DNA of 43,732 nt from Antechinus flavipes (Eukaryota), in assembly GCF_016432865.1 (NCBI RefSeq), contig NC_067400.1, positions 611,960,269 to 612,004,000 of the forward strand, in the 5' to 3' direction. How positions within the stretch are numbered: position 1 is the first letter of the stretch; every line of letters starts with the position of its first letter. The notes beneath the pieces are model-generated. The model saw only the letters and a list, made by a program, of their open reading frames with translations, was not told the DNA's origin and searched no databases. This document shows positions 1-19,300 of this stretch, piece after piece. The translations under genes and the position numbers were made by a program.

Positions 1-58
1 GCCTTGAGCTCCAGGCGTCACTTGCCTTGCAGTGGGGAAAGGGAAGGAGACCACTGAC

Positions 59-101
59 CTGTGAGCAGGGCCAAGAGCAGGCTGGCTCCGCAGGGATTCA
101 T
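59..101 (-). CDS. HCST: HCST (DAP10) coding exon 1, signal peptide; the rest of the gene lies left of the window
   Basis: Minus strand ATG at 101 reads MNPCGASLLLALLT+G (43 nt), then donor GTCAGT. Length and phase match human/mouse HCST exon 1 as recalled (14 codons +1). Position is head-to-head with NFKBID as in human. Confidence 0.7.
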
Positions 102-914
102 GCTAACGGGCTGAGATCTGAGTCAGGCTCTCCAGGATCCCAGGAAAGGAGGCAGGAGCAAAGGGTGTGGCAGCAAGAAAAGATGGCATAGGCCAGGAGC
201 CCAGCTTCCTGCCCCCAGCAAAGTGAGGGAGGGAAGTCTGAGGGGAGGAAAAGGGCGGGGAAATAAAGGGGGACATAAAGGCCCCCCCCTCCAGGGCCAC
301 AGGAGGGCGCCTGGGAGTCAGCGTGGAGGAAGCCGTGGCTAGCGGAGAGGCAGCAGTCATGGGGGAGAAGGCCCCGGTGTCCCAGAAAGAGAGCAATGGG
401 AGCCTGGGAAATGGGACGGGTGGGTATGTGAAAGGGCGGGGGCCGGACGCAGGACGCCCACTGGGCATCACAGGGAAGGGGCCCAGAGGCAAGATCCCTA
501 GGCCCCCAGAAGGGCCCGGGCGGGGGACAGAAGGCTCGGATTTTCCAGGATGCCCAGAAAGCCTGGAGGAAAGGTGCCGCGGTCTCCCGGGGAGAGGAGG
601 CAGACAGGCGGGACGCTGGTGACCCTGGAAGTGGAACTGGGGATACTTGGGGCCTGAGATATAGATCCCTTGACTTGTAAGTAGTTGTCACCCCCACTGA
701 GTAGGGGGAGAGTGTGGTCAGTGATCCCTCTCCTGGAGACATCAGCTTCTGGAGGAAAACCGAGGTCAGGGACAGCACCGGGAGCACTGAGGGGGGTGGG
801 GGTGGGGGGCCCAGACACAGATATAGAACTATCCAGACTAGACCCAAAGGTGCCTAAAACTGTGCGTGTTGATCAGCACTGTTAGGTCTGTGCCCCAAAG
901 AGATTTTTTTTTTT

Positions 915-1390
915 TAAGGAAAAGGACACATCTGTACAAAACTATTTGCAGCAGCCCTTTTTGTAGGGCGGAGAATTGGAAAGTGAAGGGATGTGCATCA
1001 TTCGGGGAATGGCTGACCAAGCTGGGGCTCTAGGTTATAGAAAAACATGGCAAAACCTATCTGAACTGACACAAAGTGAAGTGAGGAAAACCCGGAGATT
1101 TCGACTGTCACGTCGTAACGGTGATCTACTGTTAAAGAATTGACTACTCTGCTCAATAAAATGATCTAAAACCATTTCAAAGGACTCATGATGAAAAAAA
1201 TGATGAACTCTGAGTGCAACTGAAATATAATTCTCTCACTTCATTTTTCTTGCTTTGGGGGGGGCAATATGGCTGATATGGAAATACAGCTTGCATGATG
1301 TCACATGTGTCATTGATATCATTTGCTTGCTGTCTCCGTGGGTGGGAGAGAGGAAGAAATTTGTAGCTCAAAACTGAAAGAGAAAAGAAC
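915..1390 (+). mobile_element. Old L1 3' fragment (ORF2 end plus 3' UTR)
   Basis: Decayed match to the marsupial L1 3' end (ctgtacaaaactatttgcagcagccc...ggggaatggctgaccaag...gaactgacacaaagtgaagtgagg), ending in a G-rich stretch and A-rich tail. Recognised by eye. Confidence 0.65.
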
Positions 1391-1599
1391 GTTTAAAATA
1401 ATGAAATTGAAAATGTAGTTGGGAAACATTTAAAAAAACATTTTTTTTTCATTAAAGCTTTTTATCTACAAAACATGTGCATGGGTAATTTTCCCCACAA
1501 TGACCCTTGCAGAACAGATTTTTTTTTTTTTTAATCGATAAAAATACGCGAGGTAAGTAGCTAAAAAGGGGCTCGCAGCTTGGTCTCCCAGCCCCCAGC

Positions 1600-1870
1600 C
1601 CACGTGTTCACTGAATTAGGAAGTATCCCGGTGACCTGGAGCTGACAAACTCCCCGGCCCCAGAGGCTTCCCGAAAAGGCCGCCGGTCCCCGGGCTAAAT
1701 GTCAGCCAGCCAGGGGATTCTAGCGAGGGCAGCCACCGGCGGCCGCGCGGCTGCCCCCGAAACCGCTTCGGTCTTTATGGGATTCTGGGACTCGCGGGGC
1801 CGCCCCGAGGGCGGGGCGAGGGCGGGGCCGGGCCGGGATTTAAAGCGCCCGCGCGGGCCAAGTCGAGAAT
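1600..1870 (+). promoter_or_regulatory. NFKBID upstream CpG-island promoter
   Basis: E-box CACGTG 1601-1606, ETS-like AGGAAGT ~1618, GC boxes 1810-1830, TATA-like GATTTAAAG ~1837-1845, followed by an exon ending at donor AAG|gtaacc (1970/1971). Confidence 0.6.
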
Positions 1871-1906
1871 CGGGGGACGGCTCCGGCTCCCCGCTCAGAG
1901 AAGAGG

Positions 1907-1970
1907 CTGGCGCAGCGCCGAGGCCGGGGTGGCCCGGGGGCCCCGCCACCCGCGCCCCGGAATCCGAAAG
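1907..1970 (+). CDS. NFKBID: Putative NFKBID first coding segment, CUG-initiated
   Basis: Donor at 1971 is phase 1 and joins exon 3876 in frame (...PRNPK|VSRGERSHC). In-frame TAA at 1841-1843 and no ATG between it and the donor. CTG at 1907 lies in aggCTGg context. Confidence 0.5.
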
Positions 1971-2296
1971 GTAACCCGGGACTGAACGCTTGGCGCTGAG
2001 AAGGGGCCGGGGAGTGGGGACAGGGACGGGACAGATGCCTGATCCCCAAGGGGAGGGAAGGATGGGGGGGCGGAGACCAGACTGTGCTGCCTGCGGCTCC
2101 GAGGAGTCGGCCGGGGGGGCGCGGAGGAAGATCTGCATGCGGGGGCCTCTGAGCTCTTGTCCCATCAACGAGCATTTTATCCAGAGCCGGACTCCTGGAT
2201 CTAGGACCGCCAGACAGAGCCCAGGGTCAAAGGTTCCCGTGTCCCAGCGGGCAAAGCTGCGGGTGGGGGACACTTGTTTCTGAGGATCAGAGCTGG

Positions 2297-2408
2297 GGAG
2301 AGGGCAGGAGGTCTGGGATCCCCGGAGACAGAGGGCAGGAGGTCTGGGATCCAGAGTGCCCGAGACAGAGGGCAGGAGGTCTGGGATCCCCGGAGACAGA
2401 GGGCAGGG
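2297..2408. repeat. ~30-bp tandem repeat, about 3 copies
   Basis: gagggcaggaggtctgggatcccc(ggagaca) repeated in NFKBID intron 1. Confidence 0.8.
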
Positions 2409-2753
2409 GCGGGGAAGAGAGTGCCTAAATCCCGGAGCGGCGGAGCCGCAGGCTGGGGGACTCCTGGGTCCAGGAAAATAAGAACTGATAAAATAGCCCG
2501 CAGGAAGATTAAAGCGGACAGAAGCCGGTCCCCGAAGCGCCAGCGCGCAGGGGCTGGGGACTCCGGGGTGGGAAGGTCCCGGGGATGGAAGGGATTTCGG
2601 AGCTCGGGGCAGGACTGGGGCATTCCCGGATCGGGGACAGAGGTGACAGAGAGGCCGGAGGGACTCCGAGGTCAGAATGGGGGGGGGGGGGCGAGCAGAC
2701 TTCTGGGTTCTCCCGGTCCTGGGACAGGGCGTGCCAGGGACCCCTCTGGCCCT

Positions 2754-2935
2754 GGGACTTCCCCCGCCCTAGTCGAGGGACTTGGGGCCGAACAGGGATT
2801 CCCCTTCCGCGGGGATTCCGTGGTCACTGCGCTTGGCTGCCCTCCTCCCCCCCTCCCTTTGTGCTGGACACCTGGATCCCCGGGGAGGGCGGGTGGAAGA
2901 TTCCCCTGCGCAGGGGTGACGATGGAGTGACGTCA
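2754..2935. promoter_or_regulatory. NF-kB site cluster plus CRE (NFKBID intronic enhancer or second promoter)
   Basis: GGGACTTCCC 2754-2763 and GGGATTCCCC 2795-2804 both fit GGGRNNYYCC. Near-site GGGGATTCCG 2811-2820. Perfect CRE TGACGTCA 2928-2935. Confidence 0.6.
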
Positions 2936-3875
2936 TCGCGTTCTTTCCGGACTCCTTTCCGAAACCGCCCGCCTCCACTTTAACTCTTCCTCTGCCGGAC
3001 TCCAGGGAATTGGAGGGGAGGGAGGTTCGGGCCGCCTGGGCCGTTTGGTACCGGGGGAAGAGCTGAGTTTCTGGACGCTGAGTCCTCTCGGAGACAGGGA
3101 CTAGAAGCCCGCTTCATAGATTCTCGAACTAAAAGCACGCTTAAGGGGTCATCCAGGCCCGCGCTCTTAATTTGAGAAAGAAACCGAAGCCCGGGTTAGA
3201 AGCGGGGAATCCGGCCTCCGGCCCCAAATTCTTTCCGGGCAATCGCCGAGGGGGCGGAGGCCGTTTCATCTTGGACTCGACATCCTCGGCGCCAAATATT
3301 GTTGTGCCCGACACATTAATGAACTGAGTGGCCGTGTTCCCTGAGAGATAAGGGCGGGGGAGGGGGCTGAGAGCTTCGAAAGCCTCTCGCGTCCCTGAAT
3401 TAGGGATAGGGATGCGGAGGCTGCGGGGAGAGGAAGCTTTAGGTGCGCTGAAGCAAGAGATGCGGGGACTGATGCTCGGATGTCACCGAAATCCAGAGCT
3501 GGGCCATGACGAGCTTGGGTCCCAGAGAAGGAGACCCAGAGAAGGGTCCCAGACGGGGGGGCGGGAGGCGAGCAGAAGCTAGGGTCCCCGGGCCGGGATG
3601 TGGGCGGGGCAGACAGCCGGCTCCGGGGGAGACACGCTCCGGGGCTCTGGATAAGGGTTCGGCCGCCTCCCCGGTTTCCAAGACGTGGGGAGAGGGAGGT
3701 GGGGTCGGGAGGAAACTGCGGCGGAGCGGGTGGGGGGAGAGCCTCCGCGTGGGGACACTGCCCCGGTTTTCCGTGAGAGGCAGGGAAGAAGAGGGGGAGG
3801 GGCCCCTCCTTGATCTTGGACTCCCGATAACCCTCTCCCTTGGGCTCTCCTCCCTCCCTGCTCCCACCCCCACAG

Positions 3876-6800
3876 TGAGCCGGGGCGAGCGCAGCCACTG
3901 CCCGTCTCAGACTGTGAAGAAACTGCTGGAGGCGCAAAGGCGGCGGAGGCAATCTGGCACCAGCTACCAGCCTCAGGTGAGGGCGAGAGGTTCCGACCTA
4001 CACGTCCCAGCAAGCCCAGCGGCCGCCGCCTGGCTTTGGGGCCTGATTCGGCCCCACGGTCTGCCGGGAGTTGTAGTTCTGCATCCCTCTCAGGACTCGG
4101 GGGCGGGGGTGGGGGGAGTGCGGAGGAGGCAGCCTTCTTATTGAAACTGACTTTCACCTCTTCCAACCAGGGGCAAGTCCCTGCGATCTCTGCAAATGAC
4201 GCCGAACCAGGTGAGTCCGAAAACCCGGAATCGATCCCACTTCTAATCCCAGCCCCCCGAGCATCCCCGAGCTTTGCATCTGACCCCTCCTCCTCTGCAG
4301 GTCTGGGCCCCTTCCCAGGGGCTCCGGAAGTTCAGGTGGCGGGCCTTGGGGCCCCGTCGGCTCCCCCGGCGCAGGCCCCGGGCTGGGACCTGGAAGCCAG
4401 TGCCTTGTACCCCGACTGCCCCTACCACTACCCACCCTCGGCCGAAGCCTTCTTCAGCTTCCCCCCCGCGGATCCCGGGGGGCTGGCTTCCTTCCCCGCC
4501 CTCCTGGAGGTGAGTCCCCAGGCCCCTGGGGTGGGGGGTGGGGGATGGAGGGAGAGGGGTGGGGAAAGGCGCTCGCGAGGGTTTCCCAGGCCCGACGTAG
4601 TCACTTTCCTCCCCTCTTTCTCATTCCCCCTCCCCATTTTAACTCCACCCACCAATGACCAAATTAAAATGCTTAGAAAAGAAAGGAGGAAATGGTGATT
4701 CACTTCGTGGAGGCAATGATTCATTTTAAGGAAAGATCAATCTTTTTATAGAAGGGCCGCATCTTCCATCCATGAAATTCCCCCCTCCCCCCCACTTCCT
4801 CTCTGGGTCTGGGTGTCCGGGGCCCTCCCCTTTGGCTCTGATTTTCCAGACGCGGCCCCTTCATCTCGTTCCCTCCCAACTGCAGGGCCCTGTGGATGCC
4901 GCCGGACTGTATGGGGAGCCAAACCCGCCTCCGGCCGGCCCCTGGGGAGTCCCGGGGCCCCCCCAGCTCCTGGCTCCACAAGGAGCTTCCCTGGAGGCCG
5001 CGCGGGCGCAGGTTCATGCCTTAGGGCTGCAGCGGCTGCTGACCCAGGATGAGGAGGGGGACACGTGAGTTTGGGCTGGGGGGCCGGGGGTCTGGGGAAG
5101 GACCAGAACGGGGATCTTCAGCTCATCATCGTCCTCTGCCCTCCTTAGGCTTCTTCACCTGTTTGCGGCCCAAGGTCTCCGCTGGTCAGCCTATGCCGCG
5201 GCTGAGATGCTGCAGGGCTACGGACAGCTGGACATCCGGGAACACCAGGGAAAGGTGAGGGGCCGGAGCCCTGGGACAAAGGTCAGGGGTCCCTCTGCTC
5301 CAGGCTCACGTTCTGACTCCTTTCCCCGCAGACGCCCCTCCTTGTAGCCGCCACAGCCAACCAGCCGCTGATTGTCCAGGACCTGTTAACCCTGGGAGCT
5401 GACCCCAATGCTACTGACCACCGTGGCCGGACCATCCTGCACCTGGCCGCCACTTACGGCCTGCCTGGGGTCCTCACGGTGAGAATGGCTCCTAGATTCT
5501 GGCTCAAGGGGACAGAGGGGGATCCGGACTGGGCCGAGGGACCTAGTACTCGGAGAAAACAGGGGCTGAAGTCCCAGCTTTCAGGGTCCCTGGGGGGGAA
5601 ACACTGACCAAATCTGAGCCCCACGTCTCTCCCCAGGCTGTGTTTAACTCAGGGATTCAGGTAGACATGGAGACCAGGGACTTTGAGGGTGAGTCACATT
5701 TGGCTGGGGCCGAGGGGCAGAATAAAGTGGGCAGGTCTCCCCAGGACAATGGGGACTTACTGGTTCCCATGATTTCCCCAGGTCTCACCCCGCTGCATGC
5801 TGCTGTGCTCTCCCTTAACGAGGTCACCCAGCAGCCAGCCTGCGGCCCCAGGACAATGACCGTCCCAGCACGGGACAGGCTGGCCTGTGTCCAGATGCTG
5901 TTAGAGATGGGGGCCGACCACACCAGCCAGGTGGGCAGGGTCCCCGGGAGATGGCGGGAGGGGCGGCCACATCGGTCCCCGAGAATGGACCAGGCAGACC
6001 AAGAGCCCGAGCCCCAGAGGTTAGAGGTCAGAGGGTGACTCGGTGTCCTCGGCCCTCACTTCCCCCTTTCTCTAGGAATTCAAGAGTAATAAGACAGTGC
6101 TGCATCTGGCCGTCCAGGGAGCCAATCTCGCCCTCGTGCAGATGCTGCTGGACCTGCCCAGTGGGGATCCGAGGGCCTTTGTGAACATGAAGGTGGGTCC
6201 TGGGACCGCGACCTCGGGAGAAGGGACAGATATGAGAGGTGCAGATTGGAGAGGCGAGATGGAGTCTCCCCCCCCAGAGCTCGGGAGGAGTCCGCGCAGT
6301 CACTGGGAGCCCTGTCCCGTTGCCCATCGCACCGGAGTGCTCGGTAGCGGCTGGAGAGACCGAGGCCCCCTGAAAAGCTGGCTTTGAGGGACCCAGCCCT
6401 TCTATTTGTCTCCCCACCAGGCCCACGGGAACACAGCCTTGCACATGGCAGCCGCCCTGCCCCCAGGATTCCCCCAGGAGCCTATCATTCGGGGGCTCCT
6501 GGCGGCTGGGGCAGATCCCGCCCTGCGCAATCTGGAGAATGAGCAGCCGGCGCACCTGCTGAGCCCCGGACCGGCCTCGGAAGCAGTAAGGGCAGCCCCT
6601 TGGACCTGTGCCCCCCCGTTTGCTTTTCCAACCCCTATCTAGACCTCTGACCTATCCTAACCCCCCACTTACCCTGAGCCCTGACCCAGAGCTCTGATCT
6701 CAGATCCCTTATACCTATCATGCTGACCCCCAGACCTCTGATCTCTGACCCCTTATACTTATCATGCTGGCCCCCAGACCTCTGATTCCTTATACCCATC

Positions 6801-7108
6801 ATGCTGACTCCTAGATTTCTGATCTCTGACCCCTTATACCCATCATGCTGACCCCCAGACCTCTGATCTTTGACCCCTTATACCCATCATGTTGACCCCC
6901 AGGCTCCTGATCTCTGACCCCTTATACCCATCATGCTGACCCCCAGACTTCTGATCTCTGACCCCTTATGCCCATCATGTTGACCCCCAGACCTCTGATC
7001 TCTGACCCCTTATACCCATCATGCCGACCCCCGACCTCTGACTTGTTTTCCCAGCTTCGGCAGCTGTTGAAGAGAAGCCGGCCCCCACCTCTGGCCTCCT
7101 CCTCATAG
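3876..7108 (+). CDS. NFKBID: NF-kB inhibitor delta (IkBNS), ankyrin-repeat atypical IkB
   Basis: Exons 3876-3976, 4171-4210, 4301-4509, 4886-5064, 5149-5254, 5332-5478, 5637-5688, 5782-5930, 6076-6192, 6421-6585, 7055-7108 (TAG), all GT-AG and phase-consistent. Peptides QDEEGDTLLHLFAAQGLRW, TPLLVAATANQPLIV, AHGNTALHMAAALPPG and LRQLLKRSR match mammalian IkBNS. Confidence 0.95.
6690..7045. repeat. 44-bp minisatellite (~8 copies) in NFKBID last intron
   Basis: Unit gaccccttatacccatcatgctgacccccagacctctgatctct; the atcatg core recurs mostly 44 nt apart from ~6717 to ~7018. Confidence 0.9.
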
Positions 7109-8481: not shown

Positions 8482-11400
8482 TCAGGGTCGCTCCTCCAGG
8501 AACCGGTAGGTCGGGTTCTCATACCCGTGTCTCTGCAGCTCTCGGAGCTGCTGCTCCTCCAGGCTCAGCATTGGGTCCACCTGGGGCCAGGGAGGGAATC
8601 GGGAGCCTTGAAAGGCCTGAGCCCCGGACCTCCCCAGTGACCTTTGAACCCCAGTGCCCCGTGATCTCCCAGGACCCCTGCACGTCCCCTCCGCGGGCGG
8701 GCTCACCTCCACAACCCCGTGGCTGATGGCCCCGTAAGGCCGCCGCCTCCGGGCCACCAGCAGGGACAGGACCACGACGGCCGCCACGGCCACGGCCACG
8801 ACCAGGAGCCCGGCCACGGCCCCGCGGGCCACCCCTGTCCCTGCACCCATCCCCGGCTCCTGCGGGAGAAAGCAGCGTCACAGCCTGCCCGGCCCGGGGT
8901 CCCGTGCCCATCCCCGCCTCTGCCAGCCCGCCCCCCGCCCCAGCCGCTTACCAGCTCGTCCCTCTGGATCTCCGGGGAGCGGAACGGGAGGCCCCGGGGG
9001 ATGGAGACGTTCACCTGGGGGGAGAAGGCATTCAGGAGCCGCTGAGGGCGCCCTTCCTCCCCCTGCTCCTCCTGGGCACTGGCTCCCGCCCCCGCGTCCC
9101 TCCTCCAGCCCCTCGGAGAACCCGGCCCCGGCCTCTCAGAGACGAGACCCCTGACCAGCCCCCTCACCTTGTGCTCTGGAAGTCGCTCAGCTCCATCCCC
9201 TTCAGTGAAGCCTGCACCCAGGAAACCCCGACTTAGACTCCAACTGGGCCCAGCCCCGCCCCCAGCCCCTCCCCAGAGACCTCCTCAGAACCCTCAACCC
9301 CTCCCCGAGACTCCCTAGGAACTCCCACCCCCCCACGCTCTCCCCGGAGCCCCCCCAGTCCCTCCTGGGGACCTGCTAGGAACCCCCAGCCCCCTAGCCC
9401 CTCCCCAGAACCCCCAGCTCCTCCCCAAAGAGCTCCCCGGAACCCCCACCCCCACCCCAGGGACTCCAGAGCAGATTTCACATCCAGTCACTCACCTTTA
9501 AGAGGCATTGTTGCACCCATGTCTGTCGCGGGGAGTGGGGAGGGGAGGGAGAGAGGCAAGAGATTAGGGAAGGTGGCGGGAAATGTCCCTTTTGCCTGCC
9601 GGCCCCCTCCTGCCCTCCCCCCATCGGTCACCTTCTTCCGTGGCGGGGGGCAGGGGGGCACCCCCATCCTCACTGCTGCCCCCTGGGGCGGGCGCCTCCA
9701 GCTCCCCCGGACCCAGATGCTCAGCCCGGAGCAGCTCCTCTGCAGGGGAGAGTTGGGAAGAGGACCTGAAAGGCCGCCCTGGGAAGGGCCGGGGAGGGGC
9801 GAGGGGCGGGGCGGGGTCAGGGGGTGTGTTGGGGCGGGGGCGGGTACCCACGGATTTGGGGCTGAAGCTCCCGGGCCAGGTGCGGGTTCTGCTCAAGCAG
9901 CCCCAGGCTCTGATTCATGCGTTCCTCGATCACCTGGAGGTGGGTCTGAACCTGGAGTTTGGAAAGGAGGGGCTGTTAGTGCCGAGGGGCCTTGGAGGAA
10001 ATCCCCATGAGCCCCGAGACGGTGGCCAGCTGGGATCCAGAAGCGGAAGGGGGACGGGGGTGCTGGCGGCGCCCCGCAGGGCCTGGGGGCTGGGAACGGG
10101 GGCGGAGCTAAGAAGCTCCCTGCCCTCCCTACCTGGAAGCGCATCTGCTCTGCCTTCTCCGGGTCCACGGCGGCCACATGCTGGTAGTGGCGGATGGTGT
10201 GTCTTTGTTCCTTCTGCTCGGCCCGCAGGTACCGTTTCAGGGCCTGGAGCACTCGCTCTGCCTGCGGGGGAGACCCAGGTGTCCAGCCCCGCGGCCGCAC
10301 CCTCAGGGACACGCCCCCAGTCATCTGGTCCCCCACATAAGGGTCCCTGCTCCCTGCCTCCGCGGTCCCTCCTTCCTCGCGGTCCCCCCCTTCCTCATGG
10401 TCCCCCCTTCCTCGCGGTCCCCCCCTTCCTCATGGTCCCTCCTTCCTCGCGGTCCCCCTCTTCCTCGCGGTCCCCCCCTTCCTCGCGGTCCCCCTCTTCC
10501 TCGCGGTCCCCCCTTTGTTGCGGTCCCCCCTTTGTTGTGGTCCCCCCTTCCTCGCGGTTCCTCCCTCTTCGCGGTCCCCCCCTCTTCGCGGTCCCCCCTT
10601 CCTCGCGGTCCCCCCCTTCCTCATGGTCCCCCCTTCCTCGCGGTCCCCCCTTCCTCGCGGTCCCCCCTTCCTCGCGGTCCCTCCTTCCTCCTGGGCCCCC
10701 CCTTCCTCACGGCCCCAAGTCTGCAGCCTCCAGGTGCAGCCTCAGGAAGCCTGGCGTCGGGTCCCAGCCCCCTCACCTGGGGCTCGTCCCCCTGAAGAGC
10801 TGCCAGGAAGCCTTCTAGGGCCGCTCGGCGCTGGTCGTTGATGAGGGCAATGACTCGGGCAGCGTGGGTCTCCACCAGCCGCTGCCGCTCCCCGGAGACC
10901 TGCTCCTCCAACGTCTGCAGGATGGACTGGAAGTGCTACGGGGGAAGGACGGGACAGGCTATGGGCCGCTGCTGAGGGCTGGACACGGTGGTCACACGGC
11001 CCCTTCGGTCTGGCCAGCGAGGGTCCAAGGGGCGGGCCAGAGGGTGCTCACCTCGTTCAGAGCTTGCCGGTCGGTCTTAGGGAGGTTCCTGGCTTGATTG
11101 TCGGCCTCGGCCCATTCCCGCATGACCTGCCACGGGGGAGTCACATCAGTCCCCCAAGGTTGCCCCCGTCCTCTCCCCAAACCTAGGGGACTCGAGGAGG
11201 ATTCTCTTTGGGCCAGCCCTTCAGGGTGTTGGGGGGAACTCAGGGTTATTTGGAAGTTTGAAGCTGTCTTGGAATGTTCCGGGGGCACCCGGAGGGACTG
11301 AGTGTGGATGACCACATGGGCTTTTCCCTTTTTTGCTGTCGTTTGTTTGCTTTTTGTTTTCTTTCCCGGCTTTTCCCCTTTTGATCTGATTTTTCTTGTG

Positions 11401-14400
11401 CACTATGATCATTATGGAAATATGTATAGAAGAACTGCACGTTTTACATATATTGGATCACTTGCCATCTAGGGGGGAGGGAAGGAGGGAGGGGAAAGGT
11501 GGGAGGAAGGGAGAAAAATTTGGAACACAAGGTTTCGCAAGTGTGAGTGTTGAAAATTCTCTATGGATGTGTTTTGGAAATAAAAGCTTAAAAAACCCCA
11601 AATGTTATTGGGGTGGTCCGTGGGGTAACTGGAAGTTCCTGGACATTACTGGGGCAGGAGCCTCTGGTGTTTGTGGGAATATCTAGGGCATTCAGGTGAT
11701 TTCAGAAGCTCCAGGGACATGGCTCATGCTCCCCATTTTATTAACCTATCATATTATAGGGAATATAGGGAATACTGAGGTTACTGGCATGGCATGGGGT
11801 TCAAAGTATGATGAAAGAGCCACTGATCTGCCCCATCAAGGAAGGCACCCTAGGATTATCGGAGCAAAATTCTGGGTGCCCATTGGCTATTGAGGGGTCC
11901 AGGGATTTTTTTTTTCTTGCTGAGGCAACTGGGGATAAGTGATTTGCCCAGGGTCACAGCCAGGGTGCAGGGATTTTTAAAGAGGTCTGACAGGGAGCGT
12001 TCTTGGGCAAAGGGGTACCGGGGCAGGCTCCAGGGGGGCCCACCTCGTTAATCTGCCGCATCCGCCTTTCCTCCAGATCCATCTTAGCCCTCAGGAAGCC
12101 CGCGTGCTCGCCACCCTCTCCCGGCATCCCAAAGTACACATCCACACCGTCGGTGGGCCGGGCCGTCGGGCTCCCTGTGGGGTCCGAGAACGACTGCGCT
12201 GTAATGGCCTCCCTCAGCACTGCCGAGGCTACTCGGGGCTGCCGAGAATTAGAGCCTCCCTCTGGGAGTCTGGACCCCCGAACATAGGGGCTTTTGTGGG
12301 TGGCCCCTCTCCTTCCTCCCGAGGGCTGTGCCAGCCTCAGTGAAGAGCCAGCCTGACTCAGGCTCCGGGTACCTGGGGGGCCCCGACTCTGGGGGTGAGT
12401 CTCACCTTTGCTGGCCCTGGAAGGGGGTTGGGTGCTGGGGTGCTGGAGCCTCCTGGCTTCTCCCTCCCCGTCTTCTTCATCCTCCCCGGGGGGCTCCACA
12501 AAATAGTCATCCACCGTCTGAGGAAAGGACTCCTCTTCCTCCTCCTCTTCCTCCTCCCCCCCAGGGGACTGTGGCTGGGTGGGAGCGTCACTGGAGAGAC
12601 GGTGAGACCCCAGAACTGGCTGTGGGACCCACAGGCCTCCGGCACCCAGCACCCGCTTCCCAACTTTCGGGGACACAGGCCTGCCAGACTCAACCTCGGG
12701 CTCCCATTCAGCCTCCCCCCTCCCCGGTTCCTACCCATCTGGCAGGCTAGCCTGGCCCTCCTGGAGCCTCAGGGGCTCACCTGTGGGGGGTCCGCGGAGG
12801 CGTGGAGGTGCCTGGAGCCGGGCAGCATACGTACTCCACACCCCGAAATCGATCTGTTCCACATGGGAGGAGCATCCCGGAGCCGTGAAGAACCAGGCCC
12901 TCCGAGTGGCAAGCCTGAGGGAGAAAGCATGGAGGGCTTTGGGGGGTGGGGTACAAGGGAGAGTGTGGGGGAAGGGAGTGAGCCGAGGGGGATGGGAGGC
13001 GGGGCTGGGGCCCAAAGGTTAGGGAGATGGAGCACTAGGATCTGCGGGAGACAGGGCCCGGATGTGGGGCCTCTACCGTGGGGCCAGGGTAGCCGAGATC
13101 CTGCCTCACCTCTTGAGCCTGACGGTGCCTGTAGGCTGAGCCTTCACACTCATCCATCCTCTCCTGGTGCAGGAACTTGCACCCCTCAGGAACCAAGAGG
13201 GCCTCACTCACAAACTCACCGGCTGTAGGGAGACCGGGCGGATAAATGGCCCCCTCCTCTCCGCCGCCCAGACGCCCACCTCAGGGACTGGGGGTGTTTG
13301 CTCCCCAGGTGTCTCGGTCCCGCCCCCACTTTCTCAGTGCCACCTGGGGTCAGGGCTGCTCCCACTCACGCAGGCAGTGATAGGGGATCACCACGTGGTG
13401 GGGGCATCTGGTCCCGCGGGCACCCCCACACCAGCGCTCCATTGGGATGGGTCGTGAGGCTTCCTCCACGCGGCCGATCTGGAGGTCGGGGTACACCTGG
13501 GGTGGGGGAACGGCGTGGGGGTTCCATGGAGAGGGGAGCTCGCAGTTCTCCCCCTCCCAAAGGCTTTTCCCGAATCCGAAGATTTCAGCTTTGCTCCCAC
13601 GTCCACGCACGGCTCCACCCCCGATGGTCGCCACCCACGGCTGCCCTGGCCATCCTAAGCCCCGCCCCTTCAGACCCCCGGCTCGGCCCGGCCCCCTCAG
13701 GCCCCGCCCACCTGTCTGCAATAAGCCAGCACGTGCTGCGGGTCTCGGAGGCAGCGGCGTGAGTGCTGGGGGTCAGGTTCCCAGCGGCCTGTGCGCAGGT
13801 CTCTGTGCAGGGTCAGCCGCCCGCAGAGCCCAGCCACTTGGGGGACCCCCGCGATCTGAAAAGCGCAGGAAGCACGAGAGGGTTGAGAGCGAAGAACCCC
13901 AAGTCCGGGAGGCTGGCCCCGGCCCACGGCCCCGCCCCCTCAGGGACCCAGGAGTCCCGACTCCGACATCAGAGATCTCGGGCATCCGGACCCCCGGACT
14001 CCGCCCCCCTCGAGGACCCAGGCATCCGAGCCCCATCTCTAGTCCCCCCTCAGGGATCCAGGCCCCAGCCCCCGCTGCGGTGCAGATGGCGTTGCCAAGG
14101 CAACTGCTCCGGAGGGGATGGGGGTCGCCATGGAGACTGGGTCCCAGGTGAATCGCCTGGCATCACCGGCTGGTTACCGCGGAGACCGACCCTCCTTCCC
14201 GCTGCCGCACCCCCGTCCTCTCTGGCCCGCGGGGGCGGGGGGCGGCACAGGCTGGGGTCTTTCTCTGGTCTCGTTCACTCCCCCACCCCGTGACCCGGTT
14301 GCTTTGGTCCCCTAAGCCGCGATGCAAGGACCCAGGAGTCTAGGCCTCCAGCCCCTACCCCACTCAAGGGCCTGCAAACGTCCTGATCCTACAACCCTTG

Positions 14401-14806
14401 CCCCCATCAGGCTCTCGTGCGTTTTATGCTCACCGACCCTCTTCCCTCAAAGAGCGGGGTCCGGCTGGTGCAGGGCCGCGGGTGTCCCCTCCCCTCCAGC
14501 CTCAGGCGTCCAGACCCCCAACCCGTTCGGAGCCCCACCCCCCATTTCAACCGCAGGTTCTGGGGACTGCAGAGCGAGAGTCGGGGTGGGGTGGGATGGG
14601 GAGGGCGGGGGGGGGCGGCTTTGGGCGTCTGGATCCCCCACCTCACCCGCAGTCGGGGGCGTGGGTCTCACCTCCCTGGGGCTAGGCGTCCCCCTGGATG
14701 AGCTCCCGGGCGCTGGGAGCAGCAGCAGCAGTAGCAAAAGCGGCAGCAACAGCAGCGAACCGAGGCGGCGTCCGAGCCCACGGGCCGCGGGGTTCGCTGA
14801 CCCCAT
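8482..14806 (-). CDS. APLP1: Amyloid beta precursor-like protein 1, 641 aa
   Basis: 17 exons: 14672-14806, 13712-13855, 13370-13496, 13110-13222, 12781-12914, 12406-12590, 12044-12174, 11052-11126, 10777-10935, 10133-10261, 9852-9951, 9632-9739, 9496-9522, 9168-9211, 8952-9014, 8707-8859, 8482-8580, all GT-AG and in phase. Leu-rich signal peptide, E1 ([11 protein letters not shown]), acidic stretch, E2 (VMREW), no KPI exon, TM helix, GYENPTY, C-terminus FLEERP. Confidence 0.97.
10357..10715. repeat. ~17-bp CpG-containing minisatellite (~21 copies) in APLP1 intron 9
   Basis: Unit ccccccttcctcgcggt with variants (ctcatggt, cttcgcggt, tttgttgcggt). Confidence 0.92.
11400..11600 (+). mobile_element. 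Marsupial L1 3'-UTR tail fragment
   Basis: tgatcattatggaaatatgtatag...cttgccatctagggggagg...tttggaacacaaggt...aaataaaagc. The same family recurs at ~28500-28800, 31810-32085 and 33855-33970. Confidence 0.75.
14091..14186. promoter_or_regulatory. Cluster of three RFX X-box motifs in APLP1 intron 1
   Basis: GTTGCCAAGGCAAC 14091-14104 (near-palindromic, full consensus), GTCGCCATGGAGAC 14124-14137, GTTACCGCGGAGAC 14173-14186. Confidence 0.6.
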
Positions 14807-16333
14807 GTCCGGGCCGGGGCTGGGGCCCGAGCCCCCTTCTCTGTCTCCCCTGCCCGGCCCTGCAGCGAGCCCTGGGCCCGCGATCTCCTTCCTCGGCTGG
14901 GCCGGCCTTCCTTCTGGCTCAGCCGAGCTCGCCCTACCCTTCCCCCAGTCCTTGGTTGGTCGCCCTCCTTTCACTCCTCCGGCCCCCTCCCCCGGGTTTC
15001 CCCGCCCTGGGCCCGCCGGTGACAGGAGCTCCCAGCACCGCCGCCGCCTCCTCCTGCTGCTGCCCCCCCCAGCCCCGGGCTGCGCCGGCGCCGCCAGCCC
15101 CGCCCCGGCCCCGCCTCCCCGGTCGGGACAATAGCGCGGGTGAGAGTGCCTGCCCTGCTGCACGCCCTGGGCCCAGGCCTCCTTCCGGACCTTTCGGGGC
15201 CCCGCCTTGCCTCGGAGATCTCAGCGCGATGCTCCCAGACTCTTGACCTTCAGGGGTCACCCCCCTCCCCAGCCCCAGTCCTCGTCCGCCTCCCGCCCCA
15301 AACGGGAGAGTTACCACCTCACCATTACAGCATCTCCACTCCCCCCGCCCCAGCCTGCGCTGCCTCGGCCGCTGAACGTGGGCAAACCGGGGAAGGGTCC
15401 TGAACTGGGGCTGGGGCGGCGGCCAGCTTCCCCCTGGACCTGCCAGGTTCAGTGTCTCTGGGGCTTTGGGGATTTAACCTTGGAGACAAGTCTGCCTGTG
15501 GAGGTGGGGAACCCCGACCCCTAGAACTCCCCTCCTCATTCACCCCAACTCTCACTCTGAGGTCTCCAGAACCCACAGCTGAATGGGAGTGGGTACCCCG
15601 TGGGTACCCCGGACGCCGGGGTCTGGAAGGGGGGTAGGCTGGGATCCCGACACCTGTACCCCTGAACCTTCAGTGCCCGCCCTCTGGGATGGTTGATGTT
15701 TATAAATTTTTCTCACAGTACATTTTTCCATTTTTTTAATTAAACATAAATATTCAAACCCCAACATTCACTCCTTATTTCCGGATTTGTATTTGCCTCA
15801 GCAATGGGGTCATCGCAAGAAATGTGCCCCCATTCCCTCCTTCCCTGCATCAGGCTGGTGTGGCACCAGAGTCCACCATCTTGCATCCCTGGTGTCAGAA
15901 GCCATCTTGGCACAGTTTCCATGAGACTGCCATCTACCAGGCAATGGAGAAGCATCCGTTCTCGGTCCTTACACCATCACAAATCTGCTTCCTGGGCAGG
16001 GCAGGCCTTTTCTCCCCCACATTGAAAGCAAGTCTCCTTGGTTCCAGACTTGTCGCTTCCCCTTGCCCATCCTAGCCCATCTGCCACTTTTGAGTTCTCT
16101 TGACTCAAGTGAATTGAGAGTCCTGTTTACACTTGGGCCTTTTCCATTTGCTGAGCCAGGTGTCCATCAAAGTCAGGCTCCTCCTCCCCACCCCCATATC
16201 CAGTCTTGGGTTGCTATCTTGAGGGGGAAACCTTCTTGGTTGCCCAATGATTAGACCCAAGAAAGGCCTGGACCCTTTACAGAGGCCTCCCATTGGCTGG
16301 CGTGGGTGACCAGCTATCAGTCTGAGGGGCAGG

Positions 16334-19300
16334 TCACACGTGGGTCTGAAGGCGCTGGTGGCCAGGAACGGGGATGACCGTGTAGGAATAAGGCGAGGGC
16401 CCCGGAGCCGGGTCAGGGGTTCCGTAGGGGGTGGGTTTGACGTAGCTGGTGAAAGCTCGGGTGTAGGGAGTGGTGAGGTAACCCTCCCGAGGCCGGTAGA
16501 GACCACCCAGGTCTGGGGGGAATAAGGCCAGGTGAGGGGTCAGGTCATAGAAGCCAGAAGGACTGCCCGAGAAGACGGGAGATGCTGGAGAGGAGAACAG
16601 GGCGGCTCCAGGGTCCTGGCTCACACTCACACCTCGAACCTTATAGTAGCCATTAGTGGGATCCTGGGGGGAGATTTTTAAAAAAGGGAAAAATAAAAGG
16701 TGAAGGTTGAAGATGAGGAGCCAGAAAACCAACGGAGATCAAGGGGCCAGCGGAGGCTCACGGAGAGAGAGCTCCGATGTAAGGGGGGGCACGCATGGGC
16801 AAGGCCGAAGCCAGCCACCAGAGCCGCCCCCAACACCTTTGAGGGAGACAGGAAAGCTCCCAGAGATAACAGGGAGACTGGGTGGCGGCTGACAGACCAG
16901 GAGGAGAAACCCGGGGTGACCCAGAGACAGGAGCCGCAACCAGGAGGTCCCTGAACTAAGGTGGAGAAGCTTCTGGCTGGGGCTGGAAATTGGGGGGAGG
17001 GGGCAGGACAACCTTGGCACACTGGAAGGGGAAGCCCGGAGTAGGAGGGCACAGTGGCTGTGCCGGGACAAAGGAGACCAGGGACTGAATGACGGGGTGA
17101 GGGGAGCCCAGGGAAGACTGAGATAGACATGGAAAAAGGAAGCCGGGAGGTGACTGAGGGGGCCCAGGGGGAGGAGGAGCCAGAAGTCATAGACAGAGCC
17201 CACGGGTTCCAGGCCCCGCCCCTCACGGCCCCGCCCACCTTGGACTCAGGCCCCGCCTCTTCGTCGCCCGCGAGATCGTTCTGCTTGGGGAGGGACGTGC
17301 CGGCGGACTCGCTGCTGGGGACCTGGGGGAGGGGTCGGAGCTGTCAGCGGGTGTCCAGGGAGAGGCCCCCGCTAGGCCCCGGGAGCCACCGCCCGCGCCG
17401 CCCCTTCCGGCCCCGAGCTCGCGGGGCTCTCTGGCGCGGTGGGGCGCTCCCTACCCGGGCTTCCCGGCCGCTTTCCTCCTCCTCCTCGGGCGCCCGAGGG
17501 CTGGAACCGTCGCTGTCGGTGATTTGCACTAGTATGTCCCGCTTGGAGATCCTGGCTCTGGAGCCTGAGGGGGGGGGGGAGAAGGCGGAGTTCGAGGGCG
17601 GCACCTCAGAAACAATGGGGGCCTGAGGGGCAGGGATGGGCGGGGGGAGGGGGAAGGGGGGCGACTACACTGACCTCGGCCTCGGCGCCAGCAGCAGTGG
17701 GCGCCCCCCGCGATCAGCAGCAGCAGCAAGGCGGCGGCCGCCGCAGCCACTCCGGCCACGATGCGCACCAGGGGCAGTGGGTCTGGGAGGGGACACAGAG
17801 GTCAGAGTTAGGGGACAGTTTGGGACCCGGGGGGACCCAGCTCGGCTTGGAGGAGCAAGAAGCCTGGCCGAGGCTGGGTGCAAGGGAAGGGTCCTGGGGG
17901 TTCTGGGGTTTGGGGTGCGTCCCTGGGGAGCGGTCTCCAGGGCTGTGGGCGGCCCGGGGGACTTGGGGAATCCGGGGCCCTCCGTGCTCACCACTGCGGG
18001 TCAGGCCAGCCCGGGCTCCGGCCTCGCCCAGGCGGTTGCGAGCGCTGCAGTTGAAGTCCCGGATGAAGTCCGGTTCCCGAGTCCCGGAGATGTGCAGCAC
18101 CGAGACCAGCCCCCGGCGGCCCCCGCGCGGGGCCCCTGGGGCGGGGAATGTCTCCACTAGGAAGCGGCCTCGAGCTCCCGAGGCCAGGGCGCCCTCGCCC
18201 CAGGACCAGACCTGGGCGAGAAGACCGAGTGAGGCTAGGCGAGGGGATCGGAGCTGGGGGGTGGGGGGGCCCAAGGTTCTTCGGGGAAGAGGGGAAACCC
18301 TTACCACCGCGTCGGGGGCTGGAGAGCCGAGCACTAAACACTCCAGCCGGGCAGGGGCTCCCAGGGCAGCCGGGGGCGAATGCAGAGCAGTCACTGCGGG
18401 GGGGCCTGGGAGGGAGGATTCGAGAGCCAATCAGAGACGGCCCCGTCCCTCGCCCTGGCCTATCCCCTCCCTTTCGTCCTGCCCCCCAACCTCTGCTCAC
18501 CATGCACAGTCAGTGTTGCCTCCCCCAGGCCGCCCCCCACTCCTGAGGGGCCTGGCTCCGCTCGACACTCATAATTTCCTGCATCCCCCGGCCCCACAGC
18601 CGCTAGGCGCAACGTGGGCCCCGAGCCCAGGACCTGGGGAGGCATGGGGAAGAGCCATTAGGGGACATGGCAAGGAGGGAAAGAGCTCAACGAGCCCCTC
18701 CCCCCAGGCCCGAGTCCATTACCTTCGTCCCCCCATGGCGGGTCCAGGTCACTCTGGGGGGCGGGTTCCCCTTCCAGGTGCAGGTGAAAGAGGCGTCTTC
18801 CCCCACATCCACTGCCACTGGCTCAGGTGGGGAGAGGAGGAGGGGGCCGACTGAAGGTTAAAGAGAGACTATTAGTAGGACTCAGGCACCCAGACCTCCC
18901 AACCTCCTCCTCCCAGGCACTGGGACTATCCTCCTCCTGCAGATGTATCCCAATCCTATCAGCCGGACCGAGGCCCAGAGACTTCCCCGGGCCTGCAGGA
19001 ACCCTGGCCAACTCTGGCCACTGCCGCCATCCCCAGCTTCTTTAGGGATCTCCCCTTCCCCTCCCCCCACTCACACTGCACATCCAGTGCTGTGCTCCGG
19101 TTGGTACTGCCCACGGCGTTGGTCACCTCGCAGGACACAGGTTCAGTCAGGAAGGAAGCATCAGCTTTTGCCTCCAACAGAGGCCCCCGAGCTCCGGGAA
19201 GCACAGATCCCCCTTTCGCCCACCTGGGGGATAGGAAAGGTCAATACTGGAGAGTCTCAAACATGGGGGGAAGGAGGGGCAGGGAGTCCTGGGACAGTCC

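What the first reader, a model, noticed from the sequence alone, without database searches (positions are those of the whole stretch)
1907..5209. NFKBID appears to need a non-AUG (CUG) start: no in-frame AUG until inside ankyrin repeat 1
Seen: in the spliced frame the first ATG is at 5207 (AAAEMLQ), inside the ankyrin domain. The Met that begins the short human/mouse IkBNS (recalled as ...GME... / MEDSL) is CTG here (ALLE, 4504-4506), and the human ARAHML Met is Val. Exon 1 joins exon 3876 in phase, has an in-frame stop at 1841 and no ATG, but has CTG at 1907 with A at -3, G at +4 and a very GC-rich stretch downstream. This predicts a 460-aa protein. I recall human NFKBID being proposed as a non-AUG N-terminal-extension candidate but cannot verify that here. 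Inference: this species may make only the long, non-AUG isoform, a natural test that the N-terminal extension is the ancestral functional form.
Basis: partly seen in the sequence, partly recalled or inferred. Interest (0 to 1): 0.7.

Follow-up and report, generated by a model that had tools for sequence, protein, structure and literature searches.

The report
Marsupial NFKBID starts at conserved CUG
This marsupial's NFKBID gene (a nuclear brake on NF-kB signalling) has no usable AUG and almost certainly starts translation at the CUG codon already annotated as the human long-isoform start, so the mechanism is known, but all marsupials depend on it and their database gene models are wrong at the front end.

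Summary
With GT-AG exons 1907-1970, 3876-3976, 4171-4210, 4301-4509, 4886-5064 and 5149-5254, the frame is open from CTG 1907. The first in-frame ATG is at 5207, inside ankyrin repeat 1. The model is 460 aa.

CTG 1907 is the ortholog of the curated human and macaque non-AUG start. Those proteins begin MAQRRGRG; the window reads LAQRRGRG. The codon, A at -3, G at +4 and the phase-1 donor are identical in all 11 mammals checked at DNA level: 8 marsupials, platypus, sheep and deer mouse. The AUG-less extension is under purifying selection in marsupials (dN/dS 0.15-0.27).

The window encodes exactly the Antechinus flavipes RefSeq model XP_051844894.1, which starts at ATG 3506 inside intron 1. That ATG is absent from the other five marsupials aligned there, and its frame is broken by indels, so it is probably a prediction artefact.

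The missing short-isoform Met is not special to this species. It is Leu in all marsupials and monotremes examined and Met only in eutherians. Reptiles carry the extension with an AUG start, so the long form is ancestral.

Human NFKBID non-AUG initiation is already annotated, so this is a new member of a known kind. The scan had not noted NFKBID before.

The parts
1800..1845 (+). Core promoter: GC boxes (1800-1806 reverse, 1809-1817, 1820-1828) and a TATA-like TTTAAAG (1839-1845) that contains the in-frame TAA at 1841-1843
   Evidence: Read. Conserved in all marsupials aligned, with TTAAAA at the same distance in sheep and deer mouse. The function is inferred from the motifs.
1870..1970 (+). 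Exon 1. The 5' end (~1870) is inferred from the TATA-like box. There is no ATG. The donor is AAAG|gt at 1970/1971, phase 1.
   Evidence: The same exon 1/exon 2 join appears in curated primate proteins (PRNPR|VSRGERSHC) and in the dunnart, koala and Dromiciops RefSeq models.
1907..1909 (+). Proposed CUG start codon (context aagaggCTGg: A at -3, G at +4)
   Evidence: Orthologous to the first residue of human NP_001352635.2 and macaque NP_001422753.1 (MAQRRGRG) and of the blue whale Ensembl protein (LAQRRGRG). CTG and its context are identical in 11 mammals at DNA level.
2455..2935 (+). Intron 1 regulatory module: NF-kB consensus sites at 2455, 2617, 2754 and 2795, and a perfect CRE (TGACGTCA) at 2928-2935
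   Evidence: Motif scan. Window 2760-2960 is 83-96% identical across marsupials, about as conserved as the exons, and is still detectable in platypus and deer mouse. Its role as enhancer or alternative promoter is inferred.
3506..3875 (+). ATG 3506 and the intron 1 read-through frame used by RefSeq XP_051844894.1 (562 aa); probably not a real coding start
   Evidence: The window translation equals P0102 residue for residue. The ATG is absent from dunnart, bilby, wombat, koala and glider. The frame is broken by indels that are not multiples of three, with only 10-34 open codons before exon 2 in three species. Five other ATGs lie within the 190 nt upstream.
3876..3976 (+). Exon 2 (VSRGERSHCPSQTVKKLLEAQRRRRQ...), the most conserved part of the extension
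   Evidence: The TVKKLLE motif is conserved from reptiles to mammals.
4171..4210 (+). Exon 3; holds the first ATG of the mRNA (4196), which is out of frame (+1) and in weak context
4301..4509 (+). Exon 4; ends ...CTG GAG|gt. CTG 4504-4506 sits where eutherians have the short-isoform Met.
4886..5064 (+). Exon 5 (ends in QDEEGDT, the entry to ankyrin repeat 1)
5149..5254 (+). Exon 6, with the first in-frame ATG at 5207-5209 (AAAEMLQ) inside ankyrin repeat 1
   Evidence: Among marsupials, Met here occurs only in the window and in Sminthopsis.
5332..7108 (+). Exons 7-12 (5332-5478, 5637-5688, 5782-5930, 6076-6192, 6421-6585, 7055-7108), the ankyrin repeat domain and C-terminus, ending at stop TAG 7106-7108
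   Evidence: Pfam Ank families match the identical RefSeq protein.

Best explanation
The locus is the NFKBID (IkBNS, IkB-delta) gene of Antechinus flavipes or a near-identical dasyurid. I propose the following mechanism.

- Transcripts start about 30 nt after a TATA-like box and have a short leader of roughly 35 nt without any AUG.
- The scanning ribosome initiates at CUG 1907, which sits in strong Kozak context (A at -3, G at +4).
- It then reads exon 1 spliced to exon 2 and onward, making a 460-aa protein: a roughly 190-residue N-terminal extension followed by the ankyrin domain.

This is the same start codon that is curated for the long human isoform. In marsupials it is the only conserved way to translate the constrained N-terminal region, because no in-frame AUG exists upstream of the ankyrin repeats.

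Shown: the sequence anatomy, orthology of the CUG, conservation of the codon and its context, and codon-level constraint downstream of it.

Inferred: the transcription start, use of the 1970-3876 junction in this animal, and actual initiation at the CUG.
For: 1. Anatomy. The open GT-AG model gives 460 aa with no in-frame ATG before 5207.

2. Orthology to a known non-AUG start. NFKBID is among the 24 GENCODE v35 genes annotated with a non-AUG extension and is described as clearly supported by Ribo-seq. The supplement lists ENST00000641389 with a 142-codon extension. Human NP_001352635.2, macaque NP_001422753.1, cat, marmoset and Prolemur proteins start MAQRRGRG. Blue whale starts LAQRRGRG. Read-through models of sheep, guinea pig, platypus, echidna, dunnart, koala and Dromiciops all show Leu at that residue.

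3. DNA conservation. CTG GCG CAG CGC is identical in 8 marsupials from all five orders sampled, and in platypus, sheep and deer mouse. A at -3, G at +4 and the phase-1 donor are conserved throughout. The only length change is 3 nt.

4. Coding signature that begins at the CUG.
- In marsupial exon 1, 8 of 64 coding sites vary, at codon positions 3/0/5, and 6 are synonymous. In the 36-nt leader 10 of 36 sites vary (Fisher p = 0.06).
- Codons 2-8 are identical in 10 mammals apart from one Gly-to-Ser change in opossum, despite at least 5 synonymous changes.
- A 1-nt indel between sheep and deer mouse about 14 nt upstream of the CTG breaks any common frame further upstream.

5. Constraint on the extension. 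dN/dS for exons 1-5 against seven marsupials is 0.15-0.27, versus 0.04-0.08 for the ankyrin exons.

6. No conserved alternative.
- ATG 3506 is private to this species.
- Marsupial database models have eleven different N-termini, 245 to 594 aa long, the pattern expected when predictors hunt for a missing ATG.
- Ribosomes that skip the CUG meet six out-of-frame AUGs before 5207.
Against: - There are no transcript, CAGE, ribosome-footprint or peptide data for this species or any marsupial.
- RefSeq annotates a different, AUG-initiated model here.
- A conserved NF-kB/CRE module in intron 1 could be an alternative promoter whose transcripts lack CUG 1907.
- The predicted hairpin downstream of the CUG is no more stable than shuffled sequence (z from -0.9 to +0.7), so that supposed enhancer of near-cognate initiation is not supported.
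- The human extension has a negative PhyloCSF score in the cited study (-398), so constraint is weak by that measure.
Confidence: 0.78

Rival explanations
1. Translation starts at ATG 3506, as in RefSeq XP_051844894.1. This would need transcripts that begin inside intron 1 and run unspliced into exon 2, giving a 562-aa protein with 124 extra N-terminal residues.
For: The frame from 3506 to 3976 is open, and the context gccATGa has G at -3. The RefSeq model is identical to this translation. Wombat, bilby, wallaby and an older koala model are also intron 1 read-throughs. An NF-kB/CRE module upstream could drive intronic starts.
Against: The ATG is absent from the dunnart (same family), bilby, wombat, koala and glider. 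The homologous stretch carries many indels that are not multiples of three. In-frame stops lie 12, 34 and 10 codons upstream of exon 2 in dunnart, wombat and glider. Each species' model picks a different ATG. Five other ATGs lie in the 190 nt before 3506, so it would be the first AUG only if transcription started within 3481-3505.
Confidence: 0.08
2. CUG 1907 is used, but it is not the only source of protein. Transcripts from an intron 1 promoter (the NF-kB/CRE module, possibly with an alternative first exon near 2950-3030) lack exon 1. They would be translated from another near-cognate codon in exons 2-5, giving shorter proteoforms that play the part of the eutherian short isoform.
For: The module is conserved from marsupials to platypus and deer mouse. 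A gibbon database model places an extra exon between exon 1 and exon 3, and stoat and ferret models begin upstream of exon 2 with related sequence. In-frame CTGs in good context exist at 4303, 4390 and 4483. Didelphid opossums have their own in-frame Met 10 residues past the eutherian site, and RefSeq uses it for 313-aa models.
Against: No transcript evidence is available. The downstream CTGs were not tested for conservation as start codons. The out-of-frame AUG at 4196 precedes them on any transcript that contains exon 3.
Confidence: 0.12
3. The protein starts at AUG 5207, or the 5' exons are untranslated leader. This would give a 243-aa protein that lacks the extension and the first half of ankyrin repeat 1.
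For: It is the first in-frame AUG. The Ensembl Tasmanian devil entry (245 aa) begins only two residues before it.
Against: - The 216 upstream codons are open and indel-clean and evolve at dN/dS 0.15-0.27.
- Six out-of-frame AUGs precede 5207.
- The Met is Val in the non-dasyurid marsupials.
- The product would truncate the first ankyrin repeat.
Confidence: 0.02

Closest known systems
Human NFKBID long isoform with an annotated non-AUG (CUG) start (GENCODE ENST00000641389; RefSeq NP_001352635.2; macaque NP_001422753.1)
   Same: It is the same gene in the same synteny (HCST-NFKBID-APLP1), with the same exon 1/exon 2 join. The same codon opens the frame: LAQRRGRG in the window, written MAQRRGRG in the curated records. 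Kozak context is the same where DNA was examined (sheep, deer mouse, marsupials, platypus). The extension carries the same TVKKLLE and PDC.Y.C-type motifs.
   Different: Eutherians also have an in-frame AUG (GME) 142-146 codons downstream, which starts the well-studied 313/327-aa IkBNS. Marsupials and monotremes have Leu there. In marsupials the CUG is therefore the only conserved entry into the frame, not an alternative.
Other genes annotated with non-AUG N-terminal extensions in GENCODE (e.g. EIF4G2, TEAD4, MYC, VEGFA, BAG1, WT1, as listed in PMC9789052)
   Same: A near-cognate codon in good context sits upstream of, and in frame with, the conserved coding sequence. The extension is conserved across species.
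   Different: Most of these genes (MYC, VEGFA, BAG1, WT1) also use a downstream AUG. From general knowledge, not tested here, marsupial NFKBID would resemble the few genes such as EIF4G2 whose main product depends entirely on a non-AUG codon.
Reptile NFKBID (turtle Carettochelys XP model P0054; snakes P0080 and P0086; Rhineura P0097)
   Same: The architecture is the same: N-terminal extension plus ankyrin domain. Exon 1 is short and ends in phase 1 (AAA G|gt).
   Different: The reptile extension begins with an AUG (turtle MRSQKG, squamates MGMR.QKG). Whether that AUG corresponds to the mammalian CUG or to a codon 16 positions downstream cannot be settled from so short an alignment.

Membership tests
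NFKBID (IkBNS / IkB-delta) ortholog | Ankyrin-repeat domain of the IkB type | tested here: met
   Pfam Ank, Ank_2, Ank_3, Ank_4 and Ank_5 match P0102, which is identical to the window translation.
NFKBID (IkBNS / IkB-delta) ortholog | Best matches are proteins named NF-kappa-B inhibitor delta across mammals and reptiles | tested here: met
   The model is 95% identical to dunnart, 62% to platypus, and 100% to the Antechinus flavipes RefSeq model over exons 2-12.
NFKBID (IkBNS / IkB-delta) ortholog | Conserved synteny (HCST/DAP10 upstream, APLP1 downstream) | tested here: met
   The window is colinear with the dunnart locus L001, where DAP10 and APP-family genes flank NFKBID. The same neighbours appear in koala, wombat, bilby, glider, opossum and platypus.
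Non-AUG (CUG) initiated N-terminally extended proteoform | In-frame near-cognate codon in strong Kozak context, with no AUG between it and the conserved coding sequence | tested here: met
   Context aagaggCTGg at 1907; no in-frame ATG until 5207.
Non-AUG (CUG) initiated N-terminally extended proteoform | Conservation of the near-cognate codon itself | tested here: met
   CTG is identical in 11 mammals at DNA level. Leu, or the conventional Met, stands at that residue in many more proteins.
Non-AUG (CUG) initiated N-terminally extended proteoform | Codon-level constraint downstream of the codon but not upstream | tested here: met
   Variable sites fall at codon positions 3/0/5, and 6 of 8 are synonymous. 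dN/dS is 0.15-0.27. A frame-breaking 1-nt indel lies upstream in eutherians. The numbers for exon 1 alone are small (p = 0.06).
Non-AUG (CUG) initiated N-terminally extended proteoform | Initiating ribosomes or an N-terminal peptide at the codon | not testable with these tools
For human, the cited paper reports Ribo-seq support.
Non-AUG (CUG) initiated N-terminally extended proteoform | mRNA that contains the codon and the exon 1/exon 2 junction in this species | not testable with these tools
   Support is indirect only: the same junction appears in curated primate records and in the dunnart, koala and Dromiciops RefSeq models.
Non-AUG (CUG) initiated N-terminally extended proteoform | Stable RNA structure about 15 nt downstream that could enhance near-cognate initiation (an accessory feature, not a defining one) | tested here: inconclusive
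   Predicted hairpins of -25 to -35 kcal/mol occur in all species, but z-scores against shuffles run from -0.9 to +0.7.

The most novel reading that the evidence does not exclude
In marsupials NFKBID would be an obligate CUG-initiated gene, with no AUG-initiated proteoform at all. The AUG-initiated short IkBNS studied in mouse and human would be a eutherian invention. The mammalian stem lineage would have replaced a reptile-type AUG in exon 1 by a CUG that has been kept for more than 160 million years. If so, marsupials are a natural knock-out of the short isoform, and the long form is the ancestral working protein.
Probability: 0.45. Interest if true: 0.55.

Novelty: new member of a known kind. 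Interest (0 to 1): 0.38.

Why it matters
Almost all functional work on IkBNS (regulatory T cell development, B-1 cells, control of TLR-induced cytokines) has used the short AUG-initiated protein of mouse and human. The comparison here shows that the long form is the ancestral one, shared by reptiles, monotremes, marsupials and eutherians, and that in mammals it hangs on a conserved CUG. Marsupials lack the eutherian short-isoform AUG, so they show what the long form does on its own.

There is also a practical result. The N-termini of the NFKBID models for about a dozen marsupials and monotremes in RefSeq and Ensembl disagree with one another and are probably wrong. This includes the first 124 residues of the Antechinus flavipes model. 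A rule that transfers curated non-AUG starts to orthologs would fix them.

Tried and rejected
No transcript or junction evidence was obtained.
- A word search with the dunnart N-terminal part (P0026:41-190), meant to find transcript-derived protein fragments from public RNA assemblies, found nothing.
- The bacterial-type promoter and terminator scan is irrelevant to a mammalian gene and was ignored.
- Literature searches for experimental work on a CUG-initiated or long IkBNS isoform found only the GENCODE and Ribo-seq survey. The preprint has no held supplements; the published version gave one table line.
- The Tasmanian devil locus could not be used for exons 1-4.
- ACG 1877 was considered as an upstream in-frame near-cognate start. 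It was rejected because it reads ACA in the other marsupials except the dunnart.
- The joined 460-aa spliced model was never sent to a search tool. Searches used an exon ORF by reference (window:5547-6035) and database proteins by id. Splicing, translation and alignment of the model were done only in local scripts.
- No human contig was fetched or compared. For human, only the protein records returned by the searches were read.


Full report
**What is in the sequence.** The + strand of window 1800-7108 carries a 12-exon gene. The exons, all with GT-AG borders, are:
- 1: ~1870-1970
- 2: 3876-3976
- 3: 4171-4210
- 4: 4301-4509
- 5: 4886-5064
- 6: 5149-5254
- 7: 5332-5478
- 8: 5637-5688
- 9: 5782-5930
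- 10: 6076-6192
- 11: 6421-6585
- 12: 7055-7108

The CTG has A at -3 and G at +4. An in-frame TAA lies at 1841-1843, and exon 1 has no ATG. The first in-frame ATG is 5207-5209 (AAAEMLQ), inside the first ankyrin repeat. Before it the mRNA holds six ATGs, all in the +1 frame, the first at 4196 in exon 3. ATG 3506 in intron 1 is in frame with exon 2 and open to it.

**Identity of the gene and the animal.** An exon ORF searched by reference (window:5547-6035) found NFKBID proteins. A word search with the platypus protein then returned 78 NFKBID orthologs from mammals and reptiles. The translation that starts at ATG 3506 and runs through the exons above is identical, 562 of 562 residues, to RefSeq XP_051844894.1 of Antechinus flavipes. 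The window is therefore that species or something nearly identical. This agrees with an earlier scan note that the genome is marsupial. The window is colinear with the dunnart locus, where HCST/DAP10 lies upstream and APLP1 downstream.

**The CUG is the known human start codon.**
- A published survey lists NFKBID among the 24 GENCODE v35 genes annotated with a non-AUG N-terminal extension and calls the extension clearly supported by Ribo-seq (bioRxiv 10.1101/2022.05.02.490320, published as PMC9789052).
- Its supplement lists transcript ENST00000641389 with a 142-codon extension and a PhyloCSF score of -398.
- Human RefSeq isoform 5 (NP_001352635.2), the curated macaque protein (NP_001422753.1) and the cat, marmoset and Prolemur proteins begin MAQRRGRG...PRNPR|VSRGERSHC...TVKKLLEEQRRRQQ.
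- The blue whale Ensembl protein begins LAQRRGRG.
- Predicted models that read through from further upstream (sheep, guinea pig, gundi, mole rat, tarsier, golden mole, platypus, echidna, dunnart, koala, Dromiciops) all show Leu at that residue.

The window reads LAQRRGRGGPGAPPPAPRNPK|VSRGERSHCPSQTVKKLLEAQRRRRQ from CTG 1907, which is the same codon.

**DNA-level conservation.** I fetched the orthologous loci of seven marsupials (dunnart, bilby, wombat, koala, sugar glider, Dromiciops, opossum), and of platypus, sheep, deer mouse and a turtle.
- CTG GCG CAG CGC is invariant in all 11 mammals, with A at -3 and G at +4.
- The exon always ends in phase 1.
- The only length difference, 64 versus 61 nt, is a multiple of three.
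- A TATA-like box (TTTAAA in marsupials, TTAAAA in sheep and deer mouse) sits 62-68 nt before the CTG. That implies a leader of about 35 nt.
- It also means the TAA at 1841, which is part of that box, is probably not transcribed.

**The coding signature starts at the CUG.**
- Among the eight marsupials, 8 of 64 exon 1 coding sites vary. They fall at codon positions 3/0/5, and six are synonymous.
- In the 36-nt leader, 10 of 36 sites vary (Fisher p = 0.06).
- Residues 2-8 (AQRRGRG) are identical in 10 mammals apart from one Gly-to-Ser change in opossum, despite at least five synonymous changes (CGA/AGA, GGC/GGT, CGG/AGG/CGC, GGT/GGG).
- Between sheep and deer mouse, a 1-nt indel about 14 nt upstream of the CTG shifts the frame, so nothing further upstream is read in a shared frame.
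- An in-frame ACG at 1877 is ACA in the other marsupials except the dunnart.
- Over exons 1-5 as a whole, dN/dS between the window and seven marsupials is 0.15-0.27. For the ankyrin exons it is 0.04-0.08.

The AUG-less region is therefore translated and constrained, which requires a start at or just before 1907.

**The RefSeq alternative, ATG 3506.**
- The ATG is private to this genome. Dunnart, wombat, koala, glider and bilby have other bases there.
- The homologous stretch is full of indels that are not multiples of three.
- The frame upstream of exon 2 stays open for only 12 codons in dunnart, 34 in wombat and 10 in glider.
- In the window, five other ATGs lie in the 190 nt before 3506. It would be the first AUG only for a transcript that starts within 3481-3505.
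- Database models for marsupials and monotremes have eleven or more different N-termini: 245, 294, 313, 407, 439, 515, 535, 555, 562, 569, 575, 586 and 594 aa. Several skip the stop in the TATA-like box with implausibly small gaps or add unrelated upstream exons.

This is what gene predictors produce when the true start is not an ATG. I rate ATG 3506 as a probable annotation artefact, although only transcript data can exclude it.

**What is and is not special to this species.** The alignment of 24 orthologs shows otherwise.
- All eutherians sampled, from four superorders, have (G/A)ME at the end of exon 4.
- All eight marsupials have LLE, and both monotremes have LE.
- Reptiles have other residues at that position.

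On that distribution the most economical reading is that the short-isoform AUG arose on the eutherian stem, not that it was lost in this animal. The Met at 5207 occurs only in the two dasyurids. The five non-dasyurid Australasian and microbiothere marsupials have Val there, and no in-frame Met from the CUG to at least 60 residues past the QDEEGDT motif. Didelphid opossums have their own Met 10 residues beyond the eutherian site, and RefSeq uses it for 313-aa models. Dependence on the CUG is therefore a feature of marsupials as a group.

**Ancestry of the extension.** Turtle, snake, amphisbaenian and gecko orthologs carry the extension, with the TVKKLLE, W.P/D and PDCHYHC motifs. Where the models reach the N-terminus, they begin with an AUG in a short exon 1 that ends in phase 1. 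In the turtle this reads ATG CGC TCG CAG AAA G|gt. Two alignments are equally defensible on so few residues. One pairs MRSQKGGRG with LAQRRGRG, which would put the reptile AUG at the mammalian CUG. The other pairs MRSQK with PRNSK at the donor, which would put it 16 codons downstream. I leave this open.

**Mechanism and its weak points.** The proposed mechanism is ordinary scanning initiation at a near-cognate codon in optimal context on a short AUG-free leader. The GC-rich stretch after the CUG folds into hairpins of -25 to -35 kcal/mol in every species, but these are no more stable than shuffled sequence. I do not claim a structural enhancer.

Intron 1 holds four NF-kB consensus sites (2455, 2617, 2754, 2795) and a perfect CRE (2928-2935). 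The block is 83-96% identical among marsupials and is still recognisable in platypus and deer mouse. It may be an inducible enhancer or a second promoter. If it is a promoter, some transcripts would lack CUG 1907, and their translation in marsupials is unexplained.

**Limits.**
No RNA, CAGE or ribosome evidence was obtained for any marsupial.
- A search for transcript-derived protein fragments found nothing.
- The joined spliced model was handled only in local scripts and never sent to a search tool.
- No human DNA was fetched or compared. Only the human protein records returned by the searches were read.

**Verdict.** It is corrected in scope, because the feature is clade-wide and the eutherian AUG looks derived. 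Non-AUG initiation of human NFKBID is already annotated, so this is a new member of a known kind. The added value is the evidence that marsupials have no AUG alternative and that their current gene models are wrong at the N-terminus.

Noticed in passing
window 2455-2935 (intron 1 of NFKBID): A cluster of four NF-kB consensus sites (2455, 2617, 2754, 2795) plus a perfect CRE (TGACGTCA, 2928-2935). The block around 2760-2960 is 83-96% identical among marsupials, as conserved as the exons, and is still detectable in platypus and deer mouse intron 1. It is probably the inducible enhancer or an alternative promoter.
   Followed up: partly
L002:1-12520 (Sarcophilus harrisii, GCA_902635505.1): In the Tasmanian devil reference, homology to the window begins abruptly in the middle of exon 5 (window 4976 = L002 12520). 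The 12.5 kb upstream has no N run and no similarity to window 1-4975, and no DAP10 gene is called there. The RefSeq model (294 aa) uses an unrelated first exon. This is either a misassembly of the GC-rich 5' part or a real rearrangement that removes exons 1-4.
   Followed up: partly
window 4211-4300 (intron 3): Intron 3 is 90 nt long, a multiple of three, and stop-free in the reading frame, so retaining it would insert 30 residues. The koala and wombat RefSeq models keep the homologous intron as coding sequence.
   Followed up: no
window 4196-5195: All six ATGs that precede the first in-frame ATG in the spliced mRNA are in the same +1 frame. The first (4196, from the Asn-Asp codons AAT GAC) opens a 120-codon overlapping frame. 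An ATG at this spot follows from the conserved Asn-Asp/Glu codons in other mammals.
   Followed up: no
Proteins P0033, P0052, P0059, P0068, P0070, P0061 (eutherian RefSeq models); L007 upstream of 9564: Many eutherian predicted isoforms start with a short peptide (MTSF.PP.P, MTAVPPPPT, MSALPPAPT, MPSPT) read from the last roughly 10 codons of intron 1 straight into exon 2. The sugar glider has MST at the same place. A recurrent ATG just upstream of the exon 2 acceptor may mark a real alternative transcript start in eutherians. The window has none.
   Followed up: no
L008:6001-6018 (Carettochelys insculpta): The reptile NFKBID extension starts with an AUG in a five-codon exon 1 coding part (ATG CGC TCG CAG AAA G|gt), preceded by 57 open codons with no other ATG. 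Mammals have a CUG and 20-21 codons in the homologous exon.
   Followed up: partly
window 8500-17700: Downstream of NFKBID the window is colinear with the dunnart locus, which carries APLP1 on the minus strand and then an Ig-domain gene (KIRREL2-like). This is the usual mammalian gene order.
   Followed up: no
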